Origin: Octopus bimaculoides | Taxonomy: Eukaryota | Direction of reading: 5' to 3' | DNA: 64,000 nt | Assembly (NCBI RefSeq): GCF_001194135.2 | Contig: NC_068990.1 | Coordinates: 84,097,634 to 84,161,633 of the forward strand | Shown: positions 2,724 through 64,000 of the stretch, piece after piece | Layout: each line of letters begins with the position of its first letter | Position numbering within the stretch: position 1 is the stretch's first letter | Position numbers and translations under genes: made by a program | The notes under the pieces: generated by a model | Told to the model about the DNA's origin: nothing | What the model saw: the letters and a program-made list of their open reading frames with translations, nothing else | The model's database searches: none

Positions 2724-4218
2724 NNNNNNNNNNNNNNNNNNNNNNNNNNNNNNNNNNNNNNNNNNNNNNNNNNNNNNNNNNNNNNNNNNNNNNNNNNNNN
2801 NNNNNNNNNNNNNNNNNNNNNNNNNNNNNNNNNNNNNNNNNNNNNNNNNNNNNNNNNNNNNNNNNNNNNNNNNNNNNNNNNNNNNNNNNNNNNNNNNNNN
2901 NNNNNNNNNNNNNNNNNNNNNNNNNNNNNNNNNNNNNNNNNNNNNNNNNNNNNNNNNNNNNNNNNNNNNNNNNNNNNNNNNNNNNNNNNNNNNNNNNNNN
3001 NNNNNNNNNNNNNNNNNNNNNNNNNNNNNNNNNNNNNNNNNNNNNNNNNNNNNNNNNNNNNNNNNNNNNNNNNNNNNNNNNNNNNNNNNNNNNNNNNNNN
3101 NNNNNNNNNNNNNNNNNNNNNNNNNNNNNNNNNNNNNNNNNNNNNNNNNNNNNNNNNNNNNNNNNNNNNNNNNNNNNNNNNNNNNNNNNNNNNNNNNNNN
3201 NNNNNNNNNNNNNNNNNNNNNNNNNNNNNNNNNNNNNNNNNNNNNNNNNNNNNNNNNNNNNNNNNNNNNNNNNNNNNNNNNNNNNNNNNNNNNNNNNNNN
3301 NNNNNNNNNNNNNNNNNNNNNNNNNNNNNNNNNNNNNNNNNNNNNNNNNNNNNNNNNNNNNNNNNNNNNNNNNNNNNNNNNNNNNNNNNNNNNNNNNNNN
3401 NNNNNNNNNNNNNNNNNNNNNNNNNNNNNNNNNNNNNNNNNNNNNNNNNNNNNNNNNNNNNNNNNNNNNNNNNNNNNNNNNNNNNNNNNNNNNNNNNNNN
3501 NNNNNNNNNNNNNNNNNNNNNNNNNNNNNNNNNNNNNNNNNNNNNNNNNNNNNNNNNNNNNNNNNNNNNNNNNNNNNNNNNNNNNNNNNNNNNNNNNNNN
3601 NNNNNNNNNNNNNNNNNNNNNNNNTATATATATATATATATTTATATATATATTTATTTATATATATATTTATTTATATATATACACACACACACAATCT
3701 ATATACACACATACAGCTATATCTACACACACCTTTCTATCTATCTGCATACATACACACAGACCCACATTTGAGCTTCGGCCTAAATTTGAGTAAAGGT
3801 AGCTATCTCAAATTTGAAATAAATAAATACTTTCTGTCAACCTGGAAGGTTGCCTTTGGTGGTTAACACAAGAATGAGAAAATCTGTTTCTGAGGGCTGA
3901 ACAGCTTCTCCATGCTAAATTTCTAAATTCTTCACTCTCTTACTCACATCATCCTCAAAAACCACCCATCCTACTCATGTTTCAAAATGCCTCTCTCTCT
4001 CTCTGACTTTCACTCACTCACACACACACACACCGTGTCACAGAGATTTTGCCCAACAACTGTTATTTATATCCAAGCATGTGTAACATCATAAATCTAT
4101 CAATTGGCTTTGATGCGAATCTGACACTGCCTGTCACTAAACTTGAATGGCTTGGTCATCTTGTTCTCTGACCAACCATTTTTCGCTATGCATTAAACCA
4201 GTGTTTATATATATATAT

Positions 4219-4459
4219 ATGTTGTTGTACTTGAGGATGGTCATATTGCCAGTTTAGCCAATAAAAACACACGCACTGTATATTTGGTGTTAATTTGCTT
4301 CAGTTTTATATTACATTATATTACATTAGTAATGTAATGTAATGTAATATAATGTAATATAATGTAATATAATGCTGAAGCAAATTAACACCAAATATAC
4401 AGTGCGTGTGTTTTTATTGCCTAAACTGGCAATATGACCATCCCCAAGTACAACAACAT
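4219..4459. repeat. Long near-perfect inverted repeat (hairpin)
   Basis: 4219-4303 is the reverse complement of 4375-4459 with 2 mismatches in 85 bp; the spacer (attac)n/(taatg)n is also largely self-complementary. Confidence 0.95.
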
Positions 4460-4559
4460 CTGTTTCAACGCACGATTTCACATCAAAAGTCTTGCAAAAC
4501 AAATATATATATATATATAAATATATATATATCATGCTATGTTATTACATTATTAATAT

Positions 4560-5771
4560 ATCATTGTATCCAGTATTTTTAAAACTTGTACTTCCTACAG
4601 AGCACACTGTTATTGTACACTTTGTTAATGTACACATTGCATAATGATTTATTACAACATAACAGATGTGTAGCTGCTTCCATCACTGGGTCAATGCATG
4701 CGTTTTCGTGTTGTTTTACTGTAATTAAACTGACTGCTTAGAAAATAGCTGAGGGTGGGGGGGGGAGAGAAAAAAAACTAACCTGTTGGTTATACAAACA
4801 GACGGACACCCAAATCTACAAGACAGACAAACGGAGAAACAAAGACACAGGTAGCCACAACCACAGCCCAACAACAGTGTGAACATTTTGTAAATATCGG
4901 CATCAGCAGCCATTATCAAAATCCAAAGAAGGAACAACAAAAACAAACGAAAAAAATCATCATTTTCTTTGTTTTCTTTTTCTTTCTTTCTTAAAAGAGG
5001 GAGTGGGTGTCAGTTTTTTGCTTTATAGTTTACGTTTCTTTTTTGCCTAATTTTTTTTTTATTTAATTTTTTTTGCAGCAGTAGCAGTGATGAGACAAAA
5101 GAGTGGGGAGGGCTCATAAATTGAAAAGAGAAAAAAACCATTTTAAATATGGATATATANNNNNNNNNNNNNNNNNNNNNNNNNNNNNNNNNNNNNNNNN
5201 NNNNNNNNNNNNNNNNNNNNNNNNNNNNNNNNNNNNNNNNNNNNNNNNNNNNNNNNNNNNNNNNNNNNNNNNNNNNNNNNNNNNNNNNNNNNNNNNNNNN
5301 NNNNNNNNNNNNNNNNNNNNNNNNNNNNNNNNNNNNNNNNNNNNNNNNNNNNNNNNNNNNNNNNNNNNNNNNNNNNNNNNNNNNNNNNNNNNNNNNNNNN
5401 NNNNNNNNNNNNNNNNNNNNNNNNNNNNNNNNNNNNNNNNNNNNNNNNNNNNNNNNNNNNNNNNNGTGTGTATCATTTGCCAAAAAAAGTTTGGATGGAG
5501 GAAGAAATAACAAAATAAAAAGTTGGAAAAAAAAAAGGTTGCTTCTATTGGACACCCCCTCCACCCACCATCCAGTAACACATAGATAGTTATAGTCTGA
5601 TGTAGTTTTGTTTGTGTGTGTCTTTTGCAGAACCACAGACAGAGACAGACAGACAAATAAAAACAAGAGGAAGGGAGGGATGGTAATGGTCCAAGTCCCT
5701 CTCCCTCCAGTCACCCACCATCTTTTTTTTTTGCTTTTTTTTTTTCTCTCCTTTTATGTATTTCTCCACCA
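4560..5771 (-). other. Probable 3' UTR of PIP4K2 (true end unknown, interrupted by gap 5160-5465)
   Basis: Directly follows the stop codon; non-coding with U-rich/GU-rich tracts on the minus strand; extent is inferred. Confidence 0.5.
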
Positions 5772-5953
5772 CTACTCAATTGAACGCTCAATGAATTCCA
5801 AGAACCTCTTGGCATACTGATCAGGGCGCACTGTTGAGATCTCGGCACCAGAACCGTGTTTTACAGTCTTTGCAGCCTGAGCAGTCCGTTTCTTCATGCC
5901 GTACTTCGTAAGGATATCTATCATGGCCAAGAAATAAATGATTTGTTTGTCTT
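5772..5953 (-). CDS. PIP4K2: PIP4K2 last coding exon: (E)[59 protein letters not shown]
   Basis: Acceptor tttgcag|AA; IDILT motif and activation loop; TAG stop at 5774-5772. Confidence 0.96.
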
Positions 5954-8315
5954 CTGCAAAAAAAGAAAAAAATAGTAACAGGTCAATGAAATTCAGCATA
6001 TTATTATTACTATTTTTATTATTGTTATTATTCATAGTTTGATAAATATATCAACACATTTCTTTTGAAACTCATGAAGAACAGGATAATTCTTAGAAAA
6101 CATACATAAAATTGCTTCAAGCTAACATATATTTTCAAAGAATACACTAAGCATATTAACAGAACCTAGCATTATCATTTTCTAAAATGGGTATGTCTAT
6201 CCTTATATGTAATCATTGAATATTCTTATAAAACCTGTTGTACAAATTACAAAGTGGATACGGACACGGTCAGGATCTGCCATAATGTTGGATTAAAAGT
6301 CAACACTAAGTCAGTGTAATTCTTTACAACAGTCACTTGCTATTACTATGTCAATACTTAGAACATTATTGCCATGTCAGCAACAGAAATTGGTGTGAGG
6401 CTTGTTATAACATTTAAATAATGCAAGCAATAACTCTCAAAGTGCTTTTGATTATCATGTGATCATCATCATCATCATCATCCGCTTTCCATGCTGGCAT
6501 GGGTGGGACAGTTTGACAGGAGCCAGCCAGTCAGAAGCCTGCACCAGACTTCTGTGTCTGTTTTGGCAGGATTTTCACAGCTGGATGCCCTTCTTAACAC
6601 CAACCACCCAGCAGACAAAATACAGCCACAAAATATGAGCACTGCAAACAAAGATAATCTTTTGTAATTTATGTAACTTTGTGCTATAATGTAATTCTCT
6701 TAATGCATTGATCAACTTTTATCGTTAGTACTGATTTTTGTGTCACCCTTCGGCAATTGTTAAGTACCAGGCTGAATCAACTGCACTTCCCCACTCGCTA
6801 TAAAAATCATAAATTACAACAGCTTAATGTTATTTAGTTTATCTGAGTTGATATACCCAAAAGTAGTCGAGTACTAGGGTTGAATTCTTTGACTACACAC
6901 ACCCAGAAAATGTTTGGCTCTAGACCTAAGAAATCACTATGAGAAAAGGCAGCAGGCATAAGTGAATGCATATTTTGTTTTGTTCTCTACATTCTAGATA
7001 CAAGAGTTCAAATCCAACCAGAATCAAAAATAAAGGTACCAAACATGTATTAAGACCAATACAAATCACTATAATCCTCTCAAAATATTAAAAATCAAAG
7101 TTGTGTGNNNNNNNNNNNNNNNNNNNNNNNNNNNNNNNNNTGTGTGTGTGTGTGTGTGTGTGTGTGTTAGTAGAGGAAGGGTGAGTTCCTTTTTTGTTCT
7201 AGGTTAATGCTTAGAAATATCATATATATATACACATACATAAATACATATAAGACAAAAAGAGAAAGGAGAGAGATGTGACAAATATATAAAAATGTAA
7301 ACTTAAAAGCAGAAAAACAGTTTAATTTTTAATAATTTTTAATACTTTTATTACCTTTCTCACTTTTTATACCAAAAATCTCGATTTTGGGATCAACTTC
7401 TCCGGTGAATGGTTGTCCAACAAATGTTTGGGGACTATCAGGTGGAGTAGGTACACTTCCCATCACATCATTAATTTCTTCCTCCTCTAAAAGTCCATCA
7501 TCAGCTTCCCCATCAGCATTTTCTCCATTTTCCGCCTCTGCTTCGGCTTCTAGTTGAGCTTCAAATGCTTCCTGTTCAGCTTTCTCACAGTCATGAATAC
7601 CAACAATTAAACTATAATCCATCAAGTGTAAACTGGCAAGAAACTAGAAAGAAACAAAGAAGTAAAGTAAGACTTTCTCTTCAACAAAGAACAAAAATTG
7701 GTCGATGCAAGTTTGATTAACATAGTCAATTCTAAGAGGAAACTCTGACAGCAACAACAACTTTAAAAGGGTTGGAGGTTTTACATTTCTGAATCCAAGT
7801 CTCATTACAAGCTCTGTAGATTCATAACATATACTGGAAATCAATGAAATCAAATAAAATAAGTATGGACTGACATCAACATAATTATAATCCTCCACCA
7901 TAAATTTACGGTTCTCTAATAATGTAAGTAATAGTAAAATAGCTAATTAAATACTTCAGTAATTTGTTGCATTCCTTGATATTATGAGTTCAAGTTTTGC
8001 CAAGCATGATCAAATAATTACCAGTTGTGTAATGGGATCTAGGTTTTGTTATTTTCAATCATTGAAAAAGAAGATTGTGAATCCATATACTAAAAGATGT
8101 GACTTATTTTCCCTTCACTTTGTCAATAAATGCTAAGCTGAACAAAAAAACATTTTCCCCTTCTTTTTTCCCAAATTTATGCATGTGTTCAAATTGATTC
8201 TAGTAAAATGAATGATATTGAAAGCTTTTGCAGGTGAAACAGAGCAAGATTTCAATGAAGTAATAATCTTCAAAACTGTATTCATTTGGAGAATTTCTGT
8301 CTCCACTTATGCTCT

Positions 8316-8628: not shown

Positions 8629-11600
8629 ATGAGTTTTCTTTCTACACGTCCCTGTCCACACATTCTGCAAACACCTCATTCTTTTTTCCCTTTATTGTTA
8701 CTAAAGCTCTTATAATGCATCTAGGCTTTTCTCGTCAATTTACTTTGGCCCACATTATGAACAGCGTTTTTTAAGAATAATTTACTCTTTCCAACCCAGA
8801 TCTAGCTTATGCTTCAATCCAGCCCACAGAGCCAAAAGAGTTTGGCACCGTTATCCCAGATATGAGAATGTTGCTCGAGAGAAAGAGAGGAAGTGAAGGA
8901 GAAAGGGATTGGTATCTCCTCCAGGAAGAGATATATCATCTATCAATTGCTTCACACTAAGAAATCAAAAGTAAATACTGACACTTAACAACAATTGCAG
9001 TCTCTTCCCGGTATTAAGGTCACGCCTGCTGGTGAAGAGGATTGGTTTTCAAGAGTTCTGTGTCAGTACCACATGGAAAGCACTCAGCACACTCTGCAAA
9101 GTGGTTGGCATTAGGAAGGGCATCCAGCAGCAGAAACCCTGACAAATAAGACTAGAGCCTGGTGCAGCTTGCCAGCCCTGGTCAAAGCATCCAACCCATG
9201 CCAGCATGGACAATGGATGTTAAATGATGATGATGATGATGATGATGATTATGATGATGATGATGATGATGGAGATACAATTTTTCAATTTTTTTTACCC
9301 TAAGTATACATGGTGTTATGCAGTTGAGAAACAAAAATTTCCCCTGGATAGGACACCAGAATTTTCACAGGGATATTCAAAATTTAATGTCTATAGTCTT
9401 CTGAAACAAGTTTAAGAGCAAGATGTAATTATTAGAAAAGAAATCATTCATTGTATAGGATCAATGTATTCAATTAACCTCCCTCCCAAATTTCTGGCCT
9501 TGTGCTTATATTTGAAGATTGTTATCATTGAGGGACTGGCAGAGTTGATAGCCAGTCGGACTAAATGTTTTGTGATATTTGTTCCAGCTCTTTATATTCT
9601 GAGTTCAAACATCACCAAGATCAACTTTGCCTGCCATCTTTCCAGGAGTCGATAAAATAAAGTACAAATGAAGTACTACTGTGAATTTAATTGACTTACC
9701 CTTCCCTTCAAAATTGCTGTTATTATTGTTGTTGTTGTTATGATTACTATTATTATCATTATTAAGGCAGTGACCTTGTAGAATCATTAGCAAGTCAGAC
9801 AAAATGCCTAGTGATATTACTTCCAGTTCTTTATGCTCTGGATTATAAACTCCACTGTGGTTGACTTAGCCTTTTAATTTTTCGGGGATTGATGAAATAC
9901 ATAGCAGTCAACCACTGAGGGTAATGTAATCGACACTCCCACTCCCCTCAAAACTGCTGGCCTTGTGCCAAAATTTGAAACAGTTATTATGAGCAGCAGC
10001 AGCTGCCATGATAAGAGTAACAATAAATGGTGAGAGGAGGGGGGAAGTGAGGATGGAGAGGGGGAAAGGGGGGAGGAGGAGGGGAGGNNNNNNNNNNNNN
10101 NNNNNNNNNNNNNNNNNNNNNNNNNNNNNNNNNNNNNNNNNNNNNNNNNNNNNNNNNNNNNNNNNNNNNNNNNNNNNNNNNNNNNNNNNNNNNNNNNNNN
10201 NNNNNNNNNNNNNNNNNNNNNNNNNNNNNNNNNNCTGCAGCTCCAATATGTATGATGACACCATCATTGACAAAGTCGTTATCTTTCAGAGTTGGGAGGT
10301 CTTTTGCCTGCAAAATAAATCAAACCTTTCAACAATCTGTACAATGATTACAAATAATTTATGCTTCAGTTCTTTATTTTTTTATTTCTAAGTTTTAAGT
10401 AGAAAATAAGAATTTCCAGGAAGCCTTGCAGAATTTTGCCAAAAATCATAATTGCCAGTTTTGAAAAGTATTGGAAGATCTATACAGCAGAAACCATATT
10501 GCTTTTAGCAGATAATATAAGTAACAATTGAAGTTGTTTAGCTCTAGATCAGCTCAGGCAATGCTAACTTAAATTCAGAGGCAGCCCAGCTTTCATTATC
10601 CTACTTCTTTGGTACAATACAACCAAGACTACATTATCTAATCTATATTGATGTACATGATAGAACTGCATCTTTATCTAAATTGTAAAATCTATGTCTC
10701 ACTATATCCAATAAATGAAACTAAACAAGAAGTCAATACTTCTTGTTTAGTCTCATGTTAGCCCTAACTAAGCAAATCTATTTTCAAAGGAGTTCTAGCC
10801 ACAATAAAGCACTAGTCAGGTATTAAGGTCAATGGTACTGACTAACCTACTCCCTCAAAATTGTTGGTTTTGTGCCTAAATTAGAAACAATTATGACTAT
10901 TACATGCACAATATCAGTAGGACACCCAACAAAAGGACTTGTTGTCTATTCACTTTACTGAGACCTAATATACCTGCTAGAGACAACTTAGCAGTTCAAT
11001 CTCTAGAATCAATAAAAATACAGAACCGGTAAAAGACTGAATAAATGAATCATAGTATAAGAGCTACTTACTTTCTCTTTATCACTTGCTTGCCGATCAA
11101 CAGTAGATCCCTGGAATAAATGTAAATGTGAAAAGTATTTCATAGTAGGCAGATTTTAAGCCACGAAATCCTCCACTTCAATATATAGGTTTAAAGTTGG
11201 AGGGTGTCCTTAGCTTATAAAAAAATTACACAAAATAATTTTTGGTTAAATATATAAATAAATAAAATTATTAAATGTGCATTTCTCAGATGCAGAACAT
11301 TAAGAAGCATTCAGTAAGAATAGGAAGTTCATCAAAGGAATAAAAAAGCCAACTGAAAATTACTTCCAGCAGTATCAACCTAGAAAACATTTATAACAAG
11401 CAAAAGTTAGCATTATATGTGACATTACCCATTGTCATAGTTGTTCAGCTCTGTTTACCATTAATACTCTATATAATAATAAAGCACTAACAAAATCAGT
11501 GATATAGAATACACATTACCAACCTTGAGATCATACTTTTTATGGATGGTCAACCTGGGACTGAAGACATTTCTTAAAACAACAAGGTAAGTCTCCACAT

Positions 11601-15500: not shown

Positions 15501-16562
15501 AAATGACAGACTGCTGTTACTTATCTGCTATAGTAGTTTGAAGAATTTTATGTAATCAACTACCGTATGACTAAACATAAAACATTTGGGCTACAGAAGA
15601 TTACTAATTATATTCAGCTGTAAGGATTTACATGTTTAAGAAGTCTAAGGGTTTGAAATGTTGCAATGAATTATGTACAAGTGTTGTACTTAATAGATGA
15701 GATGAGTCCTGAACTACTTAATAATTGCTTTGTAAAGAATATCTTGCTGTTTTCTAATATGCAAAGTTGGCACACTTTGTTTTGTTTTGTTTTTTTAATT
15801 TCATTTGTATGATTTGACCCTTGACAGAATCTTCTATGAAATGTTAAAATTTGTTTAGTCTTTGAGAAGCTATAAATATTTTGATTGTGGAAGTACTAGC
15901 TTTTTCTGTGAGGAGCAGGGCGTTAAGTGAAAAGACCTGTTGGTAACATCTTTGTTTATAGATACATGCATTGAAGCCAATATAGAAACAAAACCATGAA
16001 ACTAATCAATATAGCCTTGTGGGTATGTTCTTGGTTATGCAATGTCCTTTAAGTGAGTATAAGTTGCTGTTAGAGTAATTTCAGTTATGCGGAGGATTTA
16101 CATTGTCAGAGTGGATATTTTTTAGTTTGGTTGCACTAAAGAAAATCTTTGATTAAAAAATAATGATAAAATTGAATGTCATATAACAATCATAAAATCC
16201 TTTTCGTTTTTTCTAATAACATTGTTATGAATCTGTAACTAGATATTAATGCTTGATGCCACAATGAAACTAAGTGACAGACATGGTAATAAATGAAATA
16301 TTTAGTATTCTTTAAATAACAATAATTAATAATAAATGTCTCAAGTTTTGGCATAAGGTTAGCAATTTTAAGGGAAATGGGTAAGTCAATTACATAGAAC
16401 TTAGTATTTGACTACTGCTTTATTTTACTGGCCCTGAAAGGATGAAAGGCAAAGCTGACCTCAGCAGGATTCGAGCCCAACACATAAAGAGCTAGAAGAA
16501 CTACCACTAAGCATTTTATTCAATGGACTAACAATTCTGTTAGCCTCAGCAGCAGCAGCAAC

Positions 16563-16621
<59 letters not shown>

Positions 16622-25100: not shown

Positions 25101-28100
25101 TATTTTACGTGCTACCTGCACAGGAGCCAGTCCAGTGGCACAAGCAACGATCTTGCTCAAATGTCTTTTCACGTGCCACCGGCACAAGTACCGGGAAGGC
25201 GACGCTGGTAACGTGAAGTTACAAAATATCAACTGCTAAGATTAAAACGATGTATATTTATCATTGCTATCAAAATACTGGTTTCAAATTTTGGCACAAG
25301 GCCAGCAAGTTCAGGAGACACAGTAAGTCCAGTTGTATCAACTCCAGTACTCAACCGGTACTTATTTTGTCAACTCCAAAGTCAACCCTTCAGCAGAACT
25401 GGAACTCAGAACATAAACACAGGCAAAATGCTGCTAAGCATATTAACAATTCTGCTAGCTCACCACTTTAATTGCTATCAAAATATCAAAACTTTATTTG
25501 ACATACAACACTAAGATATTACTGCAATGTTATTATCCAAGGACTGGCTCTTGTGCGGGTGGCACATAAAAGACACCATTTCGAGCGTGGCCGTTTTCGT
25601 GCGGGTGACACGTAAAAGCACCCACTACACTCTCTGAGTGGTTGGCGTTAGGAAGGGCATCCAGCTGTAGAAACTCTGCCAAATTAGATTGGAGCCTGGT
25701 GTTGCCATCCGGTTTCACCAGTCCTCAGTCAAATCGTCCAACCCATGCTAGCATGGAAAGCGGACGTTAAACGGTGATGATGATGATGATGATGATGATG
25801 ATACTTGATGCACATTTGAACTGGGGAACAAGCTACTCACTAGTTTATTACATTTTATAATGAAACATGGAACTGAAATATAATCTTTTCTACCCTAGGC
25901 ACAAAACCCGAAATTTTGGGGGAGTAGGTCAGTTGATTAGATCAACCCCAGTATACAATTGGTATTTAATTTATCGACCCTGAAAGGATAAAAGGCAAAG
26001 TTAACCTTGGTGAATGTTAAGACTTCACCTAAGGTATTGCCAAGACCATTGCTATCAATCATAGATATTCTGGAGAGTGGGCATTGCACTGTAATTAAAG
26101 AAACAAAATACATCATGTCACTGAAATAAATGATCACTAAGAAATACAGCACTCACCATATAATCAATGTCATCCACACTAAAACGTTCTCGAAGGTTCC
26201 GAAATACCATAGGGCAGTATTCTTTGACTTTAAAATGGCTTGGCATATTCTCCCTAGAAGTAAATGACACAGAGAATGAATATATATTTATATTTTATTT
26301 GTACATACACACACATACACAAATGTGTATATATGAACAAAATGAAATTAAGTAAAAACAAAAAATGGCTTATGAAGTAATGTTTTCTTTTATAAATTTT
26401 TTTTTTAATGTTTCTTTAAATGCCATGAAATAAGAATGGTCTCTGTAAAATTTGAGTGCAGTCATGGAACATTATTTACCTTTATTTCAGTAGCATCCAG
26501 CACAGGATTTAAAACTCATTAAAAATAAAGAAAACAGATGTCTCTATTATTTTTTAAACCATTAAGTATTAACGTGAAGAAATAGCTATAGTGCCCCACA
26601 ATGCTATAGTGAAATAAACGGCAGAGTAGTTAGTTAGGTAACCGTAATTATATCATAAAGCATAGTGTATTGGTTGTTATATATGGAATTGTATTAGAAA
26701 GCCACACAAATGATTGAAGTTTGTATATTATGAGTAAACTTCATTTTTAAAAATTGCTATATTATTCAGAGATTATAATAATTCTTACATATTTATCAAA
26801 ATATGCGATATTCAGAAGTGTTGCTTATGGGACTATGGGTTTAGCACAATTCACAGAAAATTTCTGACAAGGGTTGTGACGAGAACACTTGTCACTGCAG
26901 AATTATGCAAATAATAGTTATATACACTTTACAATAATTTTGTATGAAATTAAAACGGAAGTTTTTTTTTTTTGTTTTTTTTTTTTTCTGTTTCATTATA
27001 TTGCAAAAATTAAGTTTATTTGCCAGTCCACACACACAATTTTATATTTATATAAGGCCAGTTATGTAAAAGACAGGGTGAGTATATTTTCCTACAATTG
27101 GTCTTGGTATGTTCATTTTAAGTTATTTATTTTATCAATCCTCCATAGATGGAAGGTAAAATTGTTCCTGGTGGGATTTGAACTCAGAATGTAAAAAGAT
27201 AGAAGTAAAATATTATAAAACAATATAATTATTGCAAAAATTAAGAAAAAAAGAAAATAATCACCCGCTACATTTTTTTTCAAATTTGAAAACTAATTTT
27301 CTTAGTTACTATCGAATTATGTAACAATACTAGTGCACAAACTATTTGCATTAGTCTAGTATAAAGCACACCATGCCAGAGAACCTTTGAATAGGTAAAT
27401 ATTGGTGAGCAGGATATATTAGGAAAAAAAAACTTGGATTGGTATACGTTGCAGAAAGATTATTTTGTGTTATACAGTACCAAAAAGCAGATACGGATAG
27501 AGAAGGAGAGTCGGGTAGGAAACCAAACAAATAAGTTTCATGGTTTAAAACAAAGATATCACAAGAGATATCATAATTATTCTATTTACTACCTACAGTA
27601 GTACTACTTCCTGCAAGGAAAATATGTTTTAAACAACTTCTTTTTTATTTTTTTTTTTTAAATATTAACAATCAGCATTTACATTGATGTTTCTGTTTAA
27701 TAAATTGATTTATTCCAAAGCTTCCCAAAAAAATCCTTTATGTGCCATCAAATAACATCTGACTAAATACTCAATAGAAACACTACAAATTAAGTTATAA
27801 CAAGAAAAAAATGATATTCTTAATTTTCAAAATTGGTGCAAGGAAGAAAAGTCTAAAGCCCCCCCCCCCCCCCCCCCCCGCCTCCCCAGTGGGATTTGAA
27901 ATAATAAGGCAGAGAATGTAAGATATTCAATCAACCTGATATTCTGTCATTTTACCACTGACAGAACAATTGCTAATTTAATAACAGGAAAAATATGTAT
28001 AGAGCTCACCAATAGGCATTATAGGAATACTATTGAAATGTTAAATGAATGAAATAAAGCCAAACTTGCCTCAGACACATCATATATAATGTGATATATT

Positions 28101-31100
28101 GTCAAGACAAAGTTTGAAGGAAATTGAAGAGGAAAAAAGATTCAATAATGCTGAAACTTTTATATTCTCAGTTGAATATTTCCTTAGCCATTGTATTTCT
28201 TCTTGCAGGTCAATATCTATGAAATTAAATCCCTAAACTTGACTGGTCTCAGAAGATATATGCTTTTGCAGTTGACATCTTGTGAGTCATTTGAGGCTCA
28301 ATGGTCAAAGCATATATCTTCTCAGTCCAGTCAACTTTAAGGATTCCCGCTCATGGACATTAAGCCTGGGAGAAGAAATGCAACAACTAAACATTCAGCT
28401 AAGAACATCACTATTGAATTTTATTTTTATTTTCTTTTCAAAACTTTGAGAAAAATAATTTTACACCAATCAATATATCAGATTATGTTGTAGAAAACAA
28501 AGTTATATTTCTAGGTTTTATTATTTCATTCTTAGCTGTCATAATATTTTGAGGGTCTGATAAGATAACCTTCCCAGAATATGGTTTTGGCGTTAACTCT
28601 TACATGGAAAATATTCCCCAACTTGAAGCTTCAAAAGATTTTTTTTTTTTTTTTATCTGATATCTTGAGATGGTTTTACATAAAGTGCTTTCTTTCAGCG
28701 ATTGCATCAGTACAAACTAAATATTCTAGAACAAATAAGCACCAAAGCAAATTATGGTAGTAAAGATACAACAGAGAGATATCAAGGAACATACTGAAAT
28801 TATGTTATAGTGGTGTACCAAACAAAAACTTTTCACAAGAACCCATGCACTTTGATTTAAAATAAAAGCAGATTGGTGCACTAAAACTAAGGAAATTCAC
28901 ACAATTTTGTTTGAAACAACAATGAATACTATTTTATTATGATCTTTTTTTAACCATGGCACAATACCTCCCGTTTACAGGAGAAATTTTAATCACTTGA
29001 CATCTAGTATCCATTTAACTGACCCCAGGAAGATGAAATGCAAAATCAAAGGTAAGAGGCAAACTTTGAACTCAAACTGAAAGAAAACAAAATTAATTCT
29101 GAAAAAGTATTTAGTCCTATGTTTTTTCCATTTCTGCTACAACACCAATTACTATTGATTCTATTTTACCTTATTTTCCTCGTTTCCAATCAATGCAATT
29201 TCACTGACAATCAGACTATGATCATAAGTTTCAATATTAAATAGACTTCAGATCTTAAATACCAAAAACAAATCTGATATACTAGTGATGTGTATGCATC
29301 CATCTATACTATAATGTACCTATAAAACAATAAAATATTCTTACTATTTACCTAACATAAATTGCCCATATATACATATATATATATATATATATCTTTT
29401 TAAGGCAGATAATTCATTGCAATATAACAGAACTTTATCAAACGTAAATATTAGAACAAACAAACAACATGAAATACCAACACAAGGTGCAGTGCATAAA
29501 GCTGTGCATGGTCAGAACTACTAAACCAACAGAAGAAGTAAAGTTTTTAACAAACAGATAATAAGTATAAATGGCTCCAAAAGAATAGAATTCAGCTCAA
29601 ATTTCAGTCGTATTGAACAAATGAGAGATACATGCTTTCAGAGATAAGACAGCAGTCTATTACAGGTGACATTCCTAGATGATGATTTGGAACAGGTTCC
29701 TGATAATAGAGATGCACTGGTTTAAGAAAACAGCATGGGCATAATGGCTTTGAATCTATGACATGAGTCAACTGTCTCACAAGATTGTCCACTTTTTCAA
29801 CCTATCTTTACTATCAACTAGAACCCAACGAACCATTGAGAGCCTTTAGACAAACATTTGAAGCACAATAAATAGTAGCTTTATCTACCACAAATCTTAC
29901 TCCACAATCTTACAAAAAACTAAAACACATTATATAATGTGTTTCTAGATACTAGAAAAATGGGTGGAATGGTCAAAATCCAAATGCCTATGATAATATA
30001 TTTGCCTGGTCAAGGTTTATCCAGGACTAAACAACAACGGCAATGAAACAATGTTGTGCAACCTGCTAGAAGTAGCAGTAAATCTCATTCAAATCAACAC
30101 CACTGTCTTAGATAATGTCGTCTTAGGTGTACCTTTAAAAAGATTGCATGGTTGGAACTGCAGTGCCTTTGATCAGAGATCAACTCAATGGGGGTTGACT
30201 TGGGGTTAAACTATGATTTGAAATGCGATGTACATCTTGAATGGTTTTTCTATTAAATCATGACTAACAATAACACTCCAGAGATTTTAAAATTAACAAA
30301 ATATGCATAACCACGCGTGTGCACGCGCATGTGCACATTTGCGGAGAGGGAAATCATTTTAATGTATATGTGTACAAACTTAAATATACATTGTGTGTGT
30401 GTGTGTGTGTGTGTGCATGTGAAATCTCAAATGAGTAGTACATATGTGTATGCATGAAAGCAAGAATAAGTACAGTTAGAGAGTTGATGTGGGATGGGTC
30501 ACAAATACATGGATTGTAAGTAAGAATTATTTAGAGTAACAGTGTTATAATGATTGACAAGATTAAAACACTTGAGTTGTAAACAGGAAAAAAAATAATT
30601 TCCCAGAAGAGATAACTACATGAAACCCTGCAAGCACATCATATTACAAATAACAACAGTTAATATCTAATGCAAATCAACTTCACACATTCATTTCTGC
30701 ATAATGTCTGTAAAACCAGGTCAGCCCTTAAGTACGTCTGTGTGTGTGTATACACGTCCACAAGCATGCACACACATTCTTAGATATACATATACTCATC
30801 AAAAGTTTTCAATAACTTACTCTCTACAAGAATCTACACTGATCTTTGGAAACATGCTAGAGTGTTCCATTCTCAAGAAAAGGCAATCCCTCTGATCCTG
30901 TCAAATGATGGAGACAGACATTTAATAACGACATACTCCAATACCTATCCTTATGTTAGTACAGTTTCCATAATGTCAGACCCCATAGATACCTACTTTC
31001 CTGTGATACACACCATGGGTTCACTCATCAGAGAAATTCTGTGAAAAAAACACCATCCTTAGCAATTTCCAGCTATAATGAGCATGTGAATCACCAATCG

Positions 31101-36412: not shown

Positions 36413-39400
36413 AACATGCATAATTTCAAGTGTATGAACAGGGAAATNNNNNNNNNNCATGCATAATTTCAAGTGTATGAACAGGGAAATCTCCAACTCC
36501 TTGTGCTGTTTCATCTAGGGACTGTGGGGGATAGAAATCACTTCTCTAACATCATGTGGATCATTCTTGATAGGGGTCTTACTTACCTTGAGTTTGTAAT
36601 TGCCAATTCTGCCACAGTCAGAAATTGCACGTACTCAACTAGCTTGAAGTATCGCAACTGACCTAATCTGTTGCTATCAGAAGAATACCCTCTTAGGTAA
36701 TTTCAAGTCACTAACCAATGATAAGTTGAATAGAGTACCCCAGGCCCGGCTGGCCCATGCACAATGGCAGGGTGAGTAATTCCTGCTACCTGTAAAGGCC
36801 ATTCTGGTCATGCAAACTCATACATAACCTGAAACCATCAAATTGGTTACTTCCCCACTTGATAACTGTTGTCACTGAAGTTCTACATTCTACAAAGTGC
36901 TAACTAATTGATGCAAACATCTTGCTTGCTCTGCTAAGTGAAGCATCTAATGTAAAAACTGAAGTAGCTGAAATATCACATCCACCAAATGTTGTCTGAC
37001 ACCAGCATCCTTGCTGCTCTACCACATGAGGAATCCCACTAAGATAGTTAAAACACCTGTGGAACCTGAACTGACCAAATGGAGGCCCTCATCAACAAGC
37101 CATTTAAAATTCTTTTTCACACCAATGAAGCATAGACAAATGTAGATATAGTTAAACACTCACACATACATGCAAATACACAAACATACAAGTAATCACA
37201 AGCAGGGTGTTCAGGCTAAAAATTTTTTTTTTTTTTTTACATCTTTTTTTTTTTTCAGGAACAGTTAAAGTTGCAGTTGAGAAAAAGTTAGCTGACATGG
37301 AGGACTGTAAGCCACCTGGATAAGAGTCAGCTGTATCATAAGTTGCACAAGGTATCAAAATGCCAACATGATGACTGCTGCTCAATGTTTTGTGGAAACA
37401 GTAAAAGGTGTAGGACATGATATGGACATCATGAAAACCAAGTCACTCCAAAATGTGATGGACTTGAGTGCGTCTCCAGTGAGGGTGATGTCATGCAACC
37501 CCACATCTTTCAACAGCGACTTAGGTTCAATCAGATAGTTATGTGAATCTGCTGGGAACTGTGATCAAATCCTAGCTGGAGAGGGTTGCTGCCGGAAAAC
37601 CATATTTGTAGCAGCAGGATTTGGCTGAGAAATACACCAACTACTCTGCCTGCATTACCAAGGCCAAACCGATGGCCAAGATCAAGGAGGTTTATGAAGA
37701 TCTTGCCAGGGACACAGTGAGGAATGCCTGAACCAGGTTCCAGAGCTGTGTTCAAGCTGTGGTGGTAGTTGAAGGCAGCTACTTTGATTAAACTTATTTC
37801 CCAGTCATAATCTGGTTGATATATTTTGATTTCTTAAAATACTTCTATTTTTGAATGGGATACTGTGTTTTCTTTTCCTTTTATGCACACAATCAAATTT
37901 TGCCTGAACACCTTGATATACATGCAATCGTAATTCACATGTATACACACACACACACACACACACACATACACATACATATATATCCTACATCATCATC
38001 ATTATACATGTACACATACACATATCCTACATCATCACCATCAATATACATATGTATACACACAAGTATACACACACAAATGAACATACATAATACACAT
38101 ACAGTGTGTATGTGTAGAGCCAAAAAAGCTAAGTGATGCAGGTGGAGAGGCTGGTGAAGGGAAACAGCAGAGAAATATACCAAGCAGTTAGTAGAAAAGC
38201 TAAATACCAGGTGTACTTAGAAAGGGGTGAATCAGAAGGTAAGAGGTTTGCCAATGTTCTGCAGCACTAGGAGTGAAATGTCCTGGATTGCAAGGCAATG
38301 TATTAGAGGCAATGAAGAGATACCATAGTGAGGAAGTGTGTACAGAACGATAACAGCACACTTACTCGGACATTGAAAAGTAAGAGGAATCAAAGTGCTA
38401 TGATGAAAGGCTGCTGCATGAAGAGGATGCATGGAAGAGAGAGGGTTTTTCCCAGCCTAGATGCAACAGATCAGAAACCAACCAGTCAAGTTGATTGTAG
38501 TATGATAGATAGAAGTTGTTATGAAAGCTGAGAAGGAACTTGGTCTAAAAGGAATCATTGCAGAGATGCTTAAAATGTCTGGCAGAGTAGGGTTCAGGCT
38601 AATCATACAGAGTCAGTCAGATAGTGGAGGATGGGTTTTATAAACAAATAACTGGTGTAGCAGTTTCATTGTAAACTGTTATAAGAACAAAGAAAATGCA
38701 TTAGAACTAACAAAAAAAAAAAAGCTGCAAAAGTATAAAATTGTTGGACCAAGTTATTTAAGTTGCATAAAGAGTTACAGCTCAATTGCTTAAAATGAGA
38801 ATTTGCCTATATGGGATGCAGGAAGATGTACTATTGATGCCATCTTGCTTGTGAAACAACAGCAGATAAACAGGAGCAAGCTGCTGTGCCTAGTATTAAT
38901 TGACATGAAGGCCTTTGCTAACTGTCTCTATGATTACGACCAGATGGTCACTGAGAAAGTGAGGAATAGATAAATGGCATGTAAGGACTGTACAAGCCAT
39001 GCACAAAGGTCTAGTCAGTAAAGTGAAAGTCAGTACTGAATACACCAACAAATTCAGCCTGCAGATAAGAGTACACCAGGGCACAGATCTCAATTCCCGT
39101 CATACTGCTCCAGGTCGCAATCGAGTAGTTCAAGACCAGCTAATCATGAGAACTCCAACATGAAGACCTAGTCCTTATAGTTAAATCTGTAGTGGGACGA
39201 AAGGCAAAATTCTTGATGTGAAAGCATAACCTAGAAAAGGGAGACTGCAAAATAAATTTAGCAAAGAAGACAGATTTCTTCGGTCAAGGAAATGCTCTTG
39301 TTTGATACAGCAAAAAGAAATGGGAAGAAATGCCATATGCTGTGCCCAGTCTAAATTATGGTATTAGTGGAATCACAAAAGTTAATGAAGGGAAGTTTTA

Positions 39401-42127
39401 TTTTTATATGTGGCAGATGACAAGGACAATAAGACCACAAGGCAAATAAAATCTCTCAAATAACCAGGAAACTCCCTAGAAATAGTTGATAGCTTTTGAT
39501 GCTCAAGTGGCCTAATTAGCAGTGGAAACAGATCTTTGTGTACAAACTGTATAGCTGCATGGTAGCGAGAAAGGAGTCTTGAATGCAGAGGATTTACAAA
39601 GGCTAGAAAGAAACGAAGTAAGCATGCTCCATCGGATGTGTAATGTTAGAGTGAATGAAGGCTGGAGTACAAATGAACTGAGAGAAAAACTGGATATTAA
39701 AGGTATCAGACGTGATATGCAAGAGAGAAGACTATGTCGATATGGGCAATATGATGCATAATATATAGCTGCATTATAAAGGGCCAAGTGTTTGAAATGA
39801 ACAGAAGAGGGAGACCAAATCATCGGACAAGGTAGTGAAGACTAACCTCGAGACGATGTGTCTCACCAGGGAGTTGACTAAAAACCATGTTGATTGGTGA
39901 CATTCACCCACTTAAGTATAACAAATCAAATGGTTAATAGCAGAAGTGATGGAGGCTGGGAGACGTATGTGCGCACGCACATATTTGGGCCTATTATCCA
40001 ATATGTCCTTGTCAAAACTCCCCTCCTCTTGCCTCTCTGATACCCTCTTATCTTCCTCTCTGTAGACTATATTATGCTGCTAGTGTTAGTCAAGTTACCT
40101 GGTACTCCCTATCAGTAACCTTTCCATACTTCTTGTTATTATTCCCTTAACAGCTGTCACACCATTGTTCACTTCTACCACTATCCATCACTTTCTACCA
40201 TACTTTGAGGACAATGTATTATTCTGTTTCTACCACCATACTTTTGCTATCTTCACACATACGTACATCATGGTTCTTCTCTCACTGATCCTTCTTCAGG
40301 CCACACTTTCAGTTATTTGAGTAAACAAACGCATCATATATCAGTAGAGTTTCTTCAGTTTTAAAAGATACAAGGTAGCCTCACTCTGTGCCGGTGCCTT
40401 AATAAAATACATTTGTGACACTGTGTAAAATGGCTGGTGATTGAATGAACAGAGATAATGTAGGGTTGAGAGGACCACCCTTTAGTCTTGGCAAGGGCAA
40501 GACAACTTCTGTAATGCAGGTGCCACTATATATATATATATATATATNNNNNNNNNNNNNNNNNNNNNNNNNNNNNNNNNNNNNNNNNNNNNNNNNNNNN
40601 NNNNNNNNNNNNNNNNNNNNNNNNNNNNNNNNNNNNNNNNNNNNNNNNNNNNNNNNNNNNNNNNNNNNNNNNNNNNNNNNNNNNNNNNNNNNNNNNNNNN
40701 NNNNNNNNNNNNNNNNNNNNNNNNNNNNNNNNNNNNNNNNNNNNNNNNNNNNNNNNNNNNNNNNNNNNNNNNNNNNNNNNNNNNNNNNNNNNNNNNNNNN
40801 NNNNNNNNNNNNNNNNNNNNNNNNNNNNNNNNNNNNNNNNNNNNNNNNNNNNNNNNNNNNNNNNNNNNNNNNNNNNNNNNNNNNNNNNNNNNNNNNNNNN
40901 NNNNNNNNNNNNNNNNNNNNNNNNNNNNNNNNNNNNNNNNNNNNNNNNNNNNNNNNNNNNNNNNNNNNNNNNNNNNNNNNNNNNNNNNNNNNNNNNNNNN
41001 NNNNNTATATATATATACATACATACTCACATAATGCATATGTGTATACATGAATGTTGACATTTCCGACTGCATGAAGTCGTTCAAACAAAAAGCAGTG
41101 AAGTCATATTTACAATCCCCATGAACAATAATCCTTTAGCTCTACATTTTCAAAGTCTAGTGGGATAGAAATACCTACTTAACAAACAGGTAAAAGCTGA
41201 TGACAAGAAGGATAATCAGTCGTAAAATGCTGCCTTAAATAAGTACCTGTCCAACCCATGCTAGCAAAGAGAACAAAATGGATATAAAAATGAACACAGT
41301 GAATTTAATAATTCTTATTATTAATAGTGACTGTTTACTCCAATGTTTTGCTAATATAGGCATCTGAAAATAGTGTTTGCGGAGATGAAATTTTCCTTAT
41401 ATAGTTGTAATTGTTGTCAGGGGGTAGTGGGTTGAAGTGGTAACAAAGAGAGGGGGGAGAAAAAGAGAAAGTTTTGATTTCGGCATAACTAAAAGGAAAT
41501 GAAGAAAGGAGGTGGGGGAGAACATATTTAATATGTTTAGTCATGTTGGTAATATTCTTTAGTATTGACTGTTAAGATGAAGGTCATTGATACAAAGTTA
41601 TTTTGTACATGGCTGATTTTATTTACAGAAAAAATATTTTTTTTTTTTTAGTATGCATATATACATAGAAATATAAGGTCATCTAACAAACTCCTNNNNN
41701 NNNNNNNNNNNNNNNNNNNNNNNNNNNNNNNNNNNNNNNNNNNNNNNNNNNNNNNNNNNNNNNNNNNNNNNNNNNNNNNNNNNNNNNNNNNNNNNNNNNN
41801 NNNNNNNNNNNNNNNNNNNNNNNNNNNNNNNNNNNNNNNNNNNNNNNNNNNNNNNNNNNNNNNNNNNNNNNNNNNNNNNNNNNNNNNNNNNNNNNNNNNN
41901 NNNNNNNNNNNNNNNNNNNNNNNNNNNNNNNNNNNNNNNNNNNNNNNNNNNNNNNNNNNNNNNNNNNNNNNNNNNNNNNNNNNNNNNNNNNNNNNNNNNN
42001 NNNNNNNTCTGGGTTCAGTCTCACTGCGTGGCACCTTGGGCAAGTGTATTCTACTATAGCCCCAGGCCAATCAAACAACCAAAGCCTTGTGAGTGGATTT
42101 GGTAGATGGAAACTGAAAGAAGCCCAT

Positions 42128-63336: not shown

Positions 63337-64000
63337 CAGGGTGCGTAAGGTATTTGAGGACATACCTTTTTTGGGGTCATTGCTGCATTTTTTGCTAACT
63401 CTGTATAATCTTGTTTCAGAAAATAATAATGGCAAACCTTCAGCTTACTCAAGAAATGAAGAGGCATGCTGTTATTGTGGTTATAAAGGCTGAGCATAGC
63501 GATTTAGAAATATCTCAATTTTTAAAAATTGTCAGAACTTTCATCTACAAAGTTCGTAAGGAGTTAGAAACTGGAGATGGAAATGTATCACCAGTATCAA
63601 AGCATAAAAAGCATTCTAAATGCTATGAAACCATCAGAACACCTGAATTTATCCAGCAAGTTCAACAGACCATTGATTACAAACCCAGAAAGTCCATGAG
63701 ATCAATTGCAAAAGATCTCCATGTGTCAGAAGGAACAGTCAGAAATGTTGTCTACGAAGACATCAAATATAAGTCTTATATGATGAAGAAAGGTCACTTT
63801 GTCAGAAAAAGCAAAAGAAAATCACTATATCAGATCTAAAAGGCTCTTAAACAAACTGAAAAATCCAGCAGTGGTTTTTCTCAAACGAGAAAAACTTTGA
63901 CCAAGATCAAAAAGTTAACAGAAGAAATGACAGATGGTTATGTGCAGACTCTTCTGAAGTTCCAAGTGTTACACATACAAAATTTCCTGCAGTTATCATG
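63337..64000 (+). mobile_element. DD37D/maT-like Tc1-mariner transposon, 5' half (runs off window), frameshifted
   Basis: TA|CAGGGTG terminus; ORF MANLQLTQEMKRHAVIV...RTPEFIQQVQ...RKSMRSIAKDLHVSEGTVRNVV (HTH); then WFFSNEKNFDQDQKVNRRNDRWL...TKFPA, where the first catalytic D has become N. Confidence 0.82.

What the first reader, a model, noticed from the sequence alone, without database searches (positions are those of the whole stretch)
4219..4500. Near-perfect ~240-nt hairpin 1.3 kb downstream of the PIP4K2 stop, with AATAAA in both arms
Seen: arms 4219-4303 and 4375-4459 differ at only 2 of 85 positions, and the (attac)n/(taatg)n spacer also pairs, so nearly the whole 240 nt can fold. Each arm has an AATAAA (plus strand 4260-4265; minus, gene strand 4418-4413). 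The unit is bracketed by (TA)n runs (4205-4220, 4503-4533), and the right copy extends ~40 nt further. It looks like two copies of an unnamed element joined tail-to-tail (Penelope-like inverted arrangement or a microsatellite-targeting foldback MITE; inference). If it lies in the 3' UTR it would be a long dsRNA: a possible ADAR hyper-editing target (coleoids edit very heavily), Dicer/endo-siRNA source or Staufen site, or a bidirectional terminator.
Basis: partly seen in the sequence, partly recalled or inferred. Interest (0 to 1): 0.7.

Follow-up and report, generated by a model that had tools for sequence, protein, structure and literature searches.

The report
Inverted-repeat hairpin behind octopus PIP4K2
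A 240-base palindrome lies about 1.3-1.55 kb past the stop codon of the Octopus bimaculoides PIP4K2 gene, but it belongs to a class of near-perfect inverted repeats already known to be very common in this genome, and nothing found here gives it a special role.

Summary
Arms 4219-4328 and 4350-4459 are 110 nt long and 96% complementary; the unique 85-nt cores match at 83 of 85 positions. Either strand folds at about -185 kcal/mol (z about -26). The window is Octopus bimaculoides, with PIP4K2 on the minus strand and its stop at 5777-5775.

The hairpin is one fuller copy of a short unit (4375-4503) plus an inverted partial copy (4219-4328). They are joined across an AT-rich pentanucleotide microsatellite, and the whole lies inside a (TA)n tract. 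The fuller copy is a contiguous unit: an 80%-identical 66-nt stretch crossing the palindrome boundary occurs at a non-syntenic site in Argonauta hians.

Argonauta carries an independent hairpin of the same layout 355 nt after its own PIP4K2 stop. It is built from a different, abundant octopod repeat and sits in a gap-free assembly. Squid or cuttlefish PIP4K2 transcripts have no such hairpin.

I favour a local fold-back (template-switch) duplication at AT-rich microsatellites. Two tail-to-tail insertions or a foldback MITE are not excluded. Published work already reports that such structures are exceptionally common in this genome and are ADAR substrates.

Verdict: an ordinary member of a known kind.

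The parts
4206..4220 (.). Left flanking (TA)7.5 run. It directly abuts the outer end of the short (left) copy, and its last AT is part of the palindrome.
   Evidence: TRF; sequence
4219..4303 (+). Left arm: the shorter, inverted copy of the unit. It matches the right arm at 83 of 85 positions and carries AATAAA at 4260-4265 on the plus strand.
4304..4328 (+). Left half of the central microsatellite, (TTATA/TTACA)n. It pairs with 4350-4374.
4329..4374 (-). Right half of the central microsatellite, (GTAAT/ATAAT)n, about 20 nt longer than the left half. Positions 4329-4349 form the unpaired loop.
4375..4459 (-). Right arm: the inner part of the fuller copy of the unit, read on the gene (minus) strand. 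It carries AATAAA at 4418-4413, followed by CA dinucleotides and a GU-rich stretch.
4460..4503 (-). Extension present only in the right copy. It is contiguous with the arm in the ancestral unit: window 4496-4431 matches Argonauta L001:6906-6971 at 80% over 66 nt without gaps, crossing the 4459/4460 boundary.
4503..4532 (.). Right flanking (AT)15 run. It can pair with the left (TA)n and lengthen the stem, leaving the extension as an internal bulge.
4648..4653 (-). Gene-strand AATAAA, 1122 nt after the stop and upstream of the hairpin. If used, the mRNA ends before the hairpin.
5058..5063 (-). Gene-strand AATAAA (overlapping an ATTAAA), 712 nt after the stop and upstream of the hairpin.
5160..5465 (.). 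Assembly gap of 306 N between the PIP4K2 stop and the hairpin. A second gap, 2724-3624, bounds the contig on the other side.
5775..5957 (-). PIP4K2 last coding exon with stop codon TAG (5777-5775).
   Evidence: Pfam PF01504 in homologues

Best explanation
It is most likely a real, evolutionarily young, local inverted partial duplication with no specific function of its own.

Structure (shown): a short non-coding unit, read on the minus strand as extension, then arm, then (ATTAC/ATTAT)n (4503 down to about 4329), lies in a (TA)n-rich stretch downstream of O. bimaculoides PIP4K2. Its inner 85-110 nt are present a second time in inverted orientation (4219-4328). The two copies are joined across the AT-rich, partly self-complementary pentanucleotide microsatellite. 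The outer end of the short copy abuts a (TA)n run through an AT microhomology.

Origin (inferred): a fold-back or template-switch event during replication or break repair at these hairpin-prone AT-rich repeats. The two substitutions and the 20-nt difference in microsatellite length accumulated afterwards.

Consequence (inferred): either strand can form a stem of about 110 bp. If PIP4K2 transcripts read through the two upstream AATAAA signals and are not cleaved at the AATAAA in the first-transcribed arm, the 3' UTR would contain a long dsRNA. It would then be an unremarkable ADAR hyper-editing substrate, like the many other such loci reported for this genome.
For: Structure:
- Arm identity, asymmetric centre and fold are as described.
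- The two arms have different unique outer junctions and differ at 2 positions, so they are two distinct genomic copies.
- The right copy is the ancestral, fuller one: the Argonauta match crosses the arm/extension boundary.

The Argonauta parallel:
- A. hians has an independent hairpin with the same layout of (TA)n, short copy, AT-rich centre, longer copy, extension, (TA)n. It lies 355-557 nt after its PIP4K2 stop at L001:37536-37738, with 86-nt arms at 94% and a fold of -163 kcal/mol, z = -23.
- That stretch has no N, so such palindromes exist outside gap-ridden short-read assemblies.
- Its arms are fragments of an abundant octopod repeat. The short copy is truncated at both ends relative to other family copies. 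That fits DNA-level partial duplication better than two transposition events.

No coding or known RNA identity:
- No meaningful protein hit, no tRNA, and Rfam matches only below threshold, on both strands.

Background frequency:
- PMC5625713 reports that 4.4e-3 of O. bimaculoides loci lie in long, nearly perfect dsRNA-forming structures, exceptionally high among the 19 species compared, with very high hyper-editing.
- PMC9699675 reports that most octopus editing is in introns and 3' UTRs, in line with the hairpins there.

Genomic position:
- No other annotated gene lies within 10 kb of PIP4K2.
- A decapodiform PIP4K2 mRNA has a 3' UTR of about 1.8 kb, so a UTR reaching 1.55 kb is plausible.
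Against: - No read-level confirmation was possible. The contig is 1.5 kb long and lies between two gaps, in an assembly of 713,915 contigs (PMC10700109).
- The fold-back mechanism is inferred from anatomy and from one analogous locus. [quoted passage not shown]
- Both composites sit inside (TA)n, which would also fit insertion of a mobile palindromic unit at a TA target.
- The Argonauta non-syntenic match shows that the unit is, or was, dispersed.
- Two canonical AATAAA signals lie upstream on the gene strand and a third lies in the first arm, so mature mRNA may never contain both arms.
Confidence: 0.5

Rival explanations
1. There were two separate insertions of a dispersed short element, such as a SINE or LINE 3' end with an (ATTAC)n tail, or one insertion of a palindromic foldback MITE. 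The target was a (TA)n microsatellite. The arms are two family members lying tail-to-tail, or the long terminal inverted repeats of one element.
For: - The unit has a relative at a non-syntenic site in Argonauta.
- Each copy ends at the centre in a simple-repeat 'tail' about 45 nt after an AATAAA, and the two copies are truncated differently at their outer ends, as 5'-truncated retroposons are.
- The whole insert is bracketed by (TA)n, so a TA target duplication cannot be excluded.
- Palindromic multi-copy elements exist in this genome: L004:11603-12106 has a second copy at 16377-16597. Mariner-type transposase remnants are present in the window.
Against: - No other copy of the arm or unit in 61 kb of window plus 77 kb of other O. 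bimaculoides DNA.
- No 3-9 bp target-site duplication at the palindrome ends. Only AT/AT is seen there, and AT is itself palindromic.
- The ends of the full insert (4221 and 4503) are not inverted repeats.
- Priming on an element's own tail should give head-to-tail copies, not tail-to-tail ones (inference from target-primed reverse transcription).
- In the analogous Argonauta hairpin, the short copy lacks both ends of the family unit.
- No tRNA-like head.
Confidence: 0.27
2. It is an assembly artefact. Only one arm exists, or the two arms are alleles or are far apart. The short-read assembler folded back or collapsed sequence at the quasi-palindromic microsatellite.
For: - The contig is 1,535 bp long, between N gaps of 901 and 306.
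- The assembly has 713,915 contigs (PMC10700109).
- The turn-around lies in a microsatellite. The longest exactly shared stretch of the arms (about 45 nt plus repeat) is as long as typical k-mers (inference).
- No reads could be examined.
Against: - A graph fold-back gives a perfect palindrome running to the contig end. Here the arms differ at 2 of 85 positions, the centre is asymmetric by 20 nt, and each arm joins a different unique flank about 600-700 nt long.
- A hairpin of the same layout exists in a gap-free Argonauta assembly.
Confidence: 0.1
3. It is a selected structural element: octopod PIP4K2 needs a long dsRNA stem in its 3' UTR (for ADAR or Staufen binding, localisation, siRNA production or 3'-end control), and the stem is renewed from whatever sequence is available.
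For: - Two octopods of different families each have a near-perfect stem of at least 85 bp, bracketed by (TA)n, within 1.6 kb after the PIP4K2 stop. The two stems are built from unrelated sequences.
- These are the only two compact high-identity palindromes in about 186 kb of octopod DNA examined.
- At roughly one such locus per 45-50 kb (my estimate from PMC5625713), the chance of one falling in the Argonauta 1.6-kb interval is a few per cent.
Against: - This is a post-hoc coincidence, n = 1.
- The positions differ (355 nt against 1316 nt after the stop).
- No hairpin is present in decapodiform PIP4K2 3' UTRs assembled from several RNA runs.
- No sequence conservation, and the fold is equally strong on both strands.
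- The region is simply rich in AT microsatellites, which may make it a hotspot.
- There is no evidence that either hairpin is transcribed.
Confidence: 0.07

Closest known systems
Near-perfect dsRNA-forming inverted repeats (hyper-editing loci) of Octopus bimaculoides and other Metazoa (Porath et al. 2017, PMC5625713; Zolotarov et al. 2022, PMC9699675)
   Same: Two neighbouring inverted copies of a repeat that can form a long, almost perfect duplex in a non-coding part of a gene region. The species is reported to have an exceptionally high density of such loci.
   Different: Editing and transcription were not tested here. This one is an unusually compact, self-contained hairpin with a 21-nt loop, rather than two separate repeat copies hundreds of bases apart.
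Inverted Alu pairs (IRAlus) in human 3' UTRs
   Same: The hairpin would lie in a 3' UTR and be made of two inverted copies of a short repeat. Expected consequences are ADAR editing and Staufen or nuclear-retention effects.
   Different: Alu is a defined, million-copy SINE. The unit here has no demonstrated family in this genome, and only one partial relative was found, in Argonauta.
MITEs and foldback elements (Stowaway/Tourist-type, Drosophila FB, frog palindromic Harbinger repeat)
   Same: Small, non-coding and almost entirely palindromic. It lies in a TA-rich target. Sub-threshold structural matches to MITE-derived plant MIR hairpin families were found.
   Different: No clear target-site duplication, no other copies found, and one arm is longer than the other by 43 nt.
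Inverted duplications by fold-back or template switching (FoSTeS/MMBIR) at palindromic AT-rich repeats
   Same: One original and one inverted partial copy, a junction with 2-nt microhomology in (TA)n, an asymmetric spacer, and an AT-rich self-complementary context.
   Different: The mechanism is inferred only. No ancestral allele or breakpoint polymorphism was seen.
Drosophila hpRNA (endo-siRNA) loci
   Same: A long, near-perfect hairpin that could be diced.
   Different: There are no small-RNA data, no evidence of independent transcription, and no known target.

Membership tests
MITE / foldback DNA transposon | Terminal inverted repeats at both ends of the element | tested here: inconclusive
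   The 110-nt arms are inverted repeats. If the inserted unit is 4221-4503, the whole piece between the (TA)n runs, its two ends are not inverted repeats.
MITE / foldback DNA transposon | Target-site duplication flanking the element (TA, TTAA, TWA or 8 bp) | tested here: inconclusive
   At the palindrome ends only AT/AT is seen, and it is itself part of the palindrome. There is no 3-9 bp duplication. Both outer flanks are (TA)n, so a TA duplication can be neither shown nor excluded.
MITE / foldback DNA transposon | Multiple dispersed copies of the whole element | tested here: not met
   No second copy in the 64-kb window or in 77 kb of other O. bimaculoides loci. There is one 66-nt partial relative in 47 kb of Argonauta. 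The sample is very small compared with the genome.
Non-LTR retroposon copies (SINE or LINE 3' ends) lying tail-to-tail | 3' simple-repeat or A-rich tail, variable 5' truncation, flanking target-site duplication, multicopy family | tested here: inconclusive
   A tail-like (ATTAC/ATTAT)n and unequal outer truncation are present. No target-site duplication, no tRNA-like head, and no family shown in this genome.
Penelope-like element | Reverse transcriptase plus GIY-YIG open reading frame, terminal repeats in direct or inverted order | tested here: not met
   The longest frame over the hairpin is 71 codons. Its 43-aa core has no true homologue among 1.84 billion representatives; the only hit is a chance match to a WD40 repeat.
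Rfam microRNA precursor families (MIR6140, MIR4208, MIR6217 and others) | Score at or above the family gathering threshold, on one strand | tested here: not met
   The best score is 77 bits against a threshold of 140. The matches are equally good on both strands, so they reflect structure only.
ADAR hyper-edited inverted-repeat dsRNA | Long, nearly perfect intramolecular duplex | tested here: met
   110-bp stem at 96%, -189 kcal/mol on the gene strand.
ADAR hyper-edited inverted-repeat dsRNA | Both arms present in one transcript, with clustered A-to-G mismatches in RNA but not in DNA | not testable with these tools
No O. bimaculoides transcript contig could be retrieved.
Fold-back / template-switch inverted duplication | One copy contiguous with ancestral flank, inverted partial copy, microhomology at the return junction | tested here: met
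   The right copy is contiguous with the extension, as in the Argonauta relative. The left copy stops at the boundary and joins (TA)n through AT. The analogous Argonauta hairpin has a doubly truncated short copy.
Fold-back / template-switch inverted duplication | Ancestral (unduplicated) state at the orthologous site or in another haplotype | not testable with these tools
   O. sinensis and O. vulgaris DNA was not returned because the gene ranges exceed 100 kb. No reads were available.

The most novel reading that the evidence does not exclude
Octopod PIP4K2 3' flanks repeatedly acquire a long, near-perfect stem embedded in (TA)n. One reading is that a dsRNA element in this 3' UTR is selected and renewed from unrelated sequence. 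The other is that an undescribed mechanism targeting TA microsatellites inserts a sequence together with an inverted partial copy of itself.
Probability: 0.08. Interest if true: 0.6.

Novelty: new member of a known kind. Interest (0 to 1): 0.2.

Why it matters
If both arms are transcribed, this would be one more long dsRNA in an octopus 3' UTR and a convenient, compact test substrate for ADAR hyper-editing in a lipid-kinase gene. The class is already documented genome-wide, so little changes. The only point with wider reach is the parallel hairpin in Argonauta. If that pattern held across octopods, it would point either to a mutational mechanism at (TA)n tracts that makes hairpins, or to selection for structure in this 3' UTR.

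Tried and rejected
No RNA or DNA reads, and so no test of editing, polyadenylation or assembly.
- Exact look-ups of four window open reading frames, two over the hairpin and two PIP4K2 exons: nothing on record.
- Last-exon protein search: no octopus hit, so unannotated octopus contigs appear to be absent from that collection.
- Orthologous loci in O. vulgaris, O. sinensis and O. bimaculoides v2: gene ranges of 159, 159 and 112 kb, so no DNA was returned.
- Coding origin of the unit: rejected.
- Known RNA family or tRNA-derived SINE head: rejected.
- Metagenome scan with a degenerate 29-mer of the conserved core: 0 hits.
- Sampling 85 kb of further O. bimaculoides DNA through mariner-like genes: no further copy.
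- Helitron ends (5' TC, 3' CTRR) and hAT, piggyBac or PIF target duplications: not seen on reading the junctions.
- Weak matches of the extension near window 39.2-39.5 kb: judged to be chance; that region looks like a LINE remnant.
- Conserved hairpin in decapodiform PIP4K2 3' UTRs: none.

Full report
**1. The observation**

The sequence is as described. The repeat finder gives one outstanding inverted repeat: arms 4219-4328 and 4350-4459, 110 nt each, 96% complementary, 21 nt apart.
- The non-repetitive cores (4219-4303 and 4375-4459) match at 83 of 85 positions.
- A 55-nt arm pattern occurs only at these two places in the 64-kb window and in none of 100 shuffles.
- The centre is a pentanucleotide/decanucleotide microsatellite: (TTATA/TTACA)n at 4306-4328 and (GTAAT/ATAAT)n at 4329-4374. 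The right side is about 20 nt longer.
- (TA)7.5 at 4206-4220 and (AT)15 at 4503-4532 bracket the whole.
- AATAAA lies at 4260 on the plus strand and at 4418-4413 on the minus strand.
- As RNA, 4200-4520 folds at -189.3 kcal/mol on the minus strand (z = -26.3) and -183.3 on the plus strand (z = -25.8). The flanking TA runs lengthen the stem, and the right-hand extra 43 nt form a bulge.

**2. Context**

The window is Octopus bimaculoides. Exons found by tblastn on the minus strand, from 56236 down to 5778, are identical to XP_014773204.1 wherever they could be compared.
- The last exon ends ...[10 protein letters not shown], with TAG at 5777-5775. The hairpin therefore spans 1316-1556 nt after the stop.
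- A 306-N gap (5160-5465) lies between the stop and the hairpin. The contig carrying the hairpin runs only from 3625 to 5159, with a 901-N gap on its other side.
- This assembly consists of 713,915 contigs (PMC10700109).
- No other gene is annotated within 10 kb of PIP4K2 in O. bimaculoides, O. vulgaris or O. sinensis. The hairpin is therefore either PIP4K2 3' UTR or intergenic.
- On the gene strand, canonical AATAAA signals lie 712 and 1122 nt after the stop, before the hairpin. The third is in the first-transcribed arm. If that one were used, cleavage would fall inside the arm and the mature mRNA would lack the second arm.
- Decapodiform PIP4K2 transcript contigs from several independent RNA runs carry a 3' UTR of about 1.8 kb. 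A UTR reaching 1.55 kb is thus plausible but not shown.

**3. What the arms are**
- The arm has no other copy in the window or in 77 kb of non-gap sequence from three other O. bimaculoides loci.
- It is not coding. The 43-aa frame across extension and arm finds, among 1.84 billion representatives, only a bacterial WD40 repeat protein through a repeated LGDGxxAS motif.
- Rfam gives only sub-threshold, strand-symmetric matches to long plant MIR hairpin families. ARAGORN finds no tRNA.
- In the Argonauta hians PIP4K2 locus (L001), window 4496-4431 matches L001:6906-6971 at 80% over 66 ungapped bases (E about 1e-11). The window stretch is the extension plus the first 29 nt of the right arm.
- That Argonauta site is upstream of PIP4K2, so it is not syntenic. 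The match crosses the palindrome boundary at 4459/4460.
- Two conclusions follow. Extension plus arm is one ancestral unit, so the right copy is the fuller or original one. And the unit is, or was, a dispersed sequence in octopods.

**4. A parallel case**

One is the one under study. The other is L001:37536-37621 / 37653-37738 in Argonauta: 86-nt arms, 94% complementary, 31-nt spacer, lying 355-557 nt after the Argonauta PIP4K2 stop (-163 kcal/mol, z = -23).
- Its layout is the same: (TA)n, shorter copy, AT-rich centre, longer copy, an extra 27 nt or so, (TA)n.
- Its arms are unrelated to the O. bimaculoides arms. They are fragments of an abundant octopod repeat also seen at L001:28235-28400 and at window 6462-6620 and 44935-45090.
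- The shorter copy lacks both ends of that family unit. That is not what a retrotransposed or transposed copy looks like; it is what a partial inverted duplication gives.
- L001 has no N, so such hairpins are not peculiar to gap-ridden short-read assemblies.
- Older, degenerate palindromes are frequent: window 28162-28408 and 48765-49357, and L004:11603-12106. The last has a second copy at 16377-16597 and so belongs to a palindromic repeat family.

**5. Mechanism**

I favour a fold-back or template-switch duplication at hairpin-prone AT-rich microsatellites, at confidence 0.5. Shown by the sequence:
- One copy is contiguous with its ancestral flank.
- The other copy is inverted, partial, and joined to (TA)n through an AT microhomology.
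- The spacer is asymmetric.
- The Argonauta analogue is truncated at both ends.

Inferred: the event itself and its timing.

Rivals:
- Two tail-to-tail insertions of a short retroposon, or a foldback MITE in a TA target (0.27). For it: the simple-repeat 'tail' after an AATAAA, the unequal outer truncation, the (TA)n bracket and the dispersed relative. Against it: no target-site duplication, no further copies, and the wrong orientation for self-tail priming.
- An assembly artefact (0.10). Against it: two arm differences, a 20-nt asymmetry and two different unique flanks.
- A selected structure (0.07). It rests only on the Octopus/Argonauta coincidence and is weakened by the absence of a hairpin in decapodiform 3' UTRs.

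**6. Comparison with what is known**

Porath et al. 2017 report that O. bimaculoides has an exceptionally high fraction of loci (4.4e-3) able to form long, nearly perfect dsRNA with nearby sequence. They report an exceptionally strong hyper-editing signal, mostly from neighbouring inverted repeats (PMC5625713). Zolotarov et al. 2022 report that most octopus editing lies in introns and 3' UTRs, in line with the hairpins there, and that octopus 3' UTRs are long (PMC9699675).

By my rough arithmetic, 4.4e-3 of a genome of about 2.3-2.7 Gb at about 200-250 nt per locus is some tens of thousands of loci, or about one per 50 kb. This agrees with my small sample. One such hairpin within 1.6 kb of a given stop codon is therefore not surprising. 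The locus is a new member of a known kind.

**7. Limits**

Nothing can be said about transcription, polyadenylation, editing, small RNAs or read support. Orthologous DNA from O. sinensis and O. vulgaris could not be fetched. Copy number in the full genome is unknown.

Noticed in passing
L001:37536-37738 (Argonauta hians, 355-557 nt after the PIP4K2 stop at 37179-37181): An independent near-perfect hairpin (86-nt arms, 94%, 31-nt spacer) with the same (TA)n-bracketed layout of a short and a long copy. It is built from fragments of an abundant octopod repeat.
   Followed up: yes
L001:38251-38306 / 38572-38627: A second inverted pair (56-nt arms, 93%, 265-nt spacer) in the Argonauta PIP4K2 3' flank, about 1.07-1.45 kb after the stop. 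It also starts at a (TA)n run.
   Followed up: no
window 10088-10234 (N gap) and PIP4K2 exons around 10245-10310: The annotated O. bimaculoides protein XP_014773204.1 reads ...[16 protein letters not shown]... where O. vulgaris, O. sinensis and decapodiforms have ...GAAEKDIFMKKLNADTE... The conserved exon probably falls in this assembly gap, and the gene model reads into intron sequence.
   Followed up: partly
window 6462-6620 and 44935-45090; L001:28235-28400: Copies of an abundant octopod short repeat (...TTTCCATGCTGGCATGGGT.GGACAGTTTGACAGGAGC...GATGCCCTTC...), preceded by (CAT)n. In Argonauta it often occurs in inverted pairs (28042-28469).
   Followed up: partly
window 46959-47324 and 47550-47813 (+); 63399-63836 (+): Remnants of a mariner/Mos1-type transposase: an HTH region with homologues carrying PF13565 and PF17906, and a frame with a C-terminal transposase-like motif. 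There is also a further frame with an apparent Tc1-like HTH region.
   Followed up: partly
window 28162-28408, 48765-49357; L004:11603-12106 and 16377-16597; L002:8483-8618: Older, degenerate palindromes (64-71% self-complementary, 136-593 nt). The L004 one has a second copy 4.5 kb away, so palindromic repeat families exist in O. bimaculoides.
   Followed up: partly
L001:6436-6458 / 6947-6969: In Argonauta, the stretch homologous to the outer end of the O. bimaculoides arm has a 23-nt inverted partner (87%) 488 nt upstream. This may be a terminal inverted repeat of the unit's parent element, or chance.
   Followed up: no
window 39500-39700 (+): A stretch that by eye resembles the C-terminal region of LINE reverse-transcriptase genes (...[25 protein letters not shown]...). 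It was not checked against Pfam.
   Followed up: no
window 3625-3684, 4011-4033, 4206-4220, 4503-4532, 5147-5159: The PIP4K2 3' flank is unusually dense in TA-type and CA microsatellites. Both contig ends next to the N gaps fall in TA-rich repeats, which are probably what broke the assembly.
   Followed up: no
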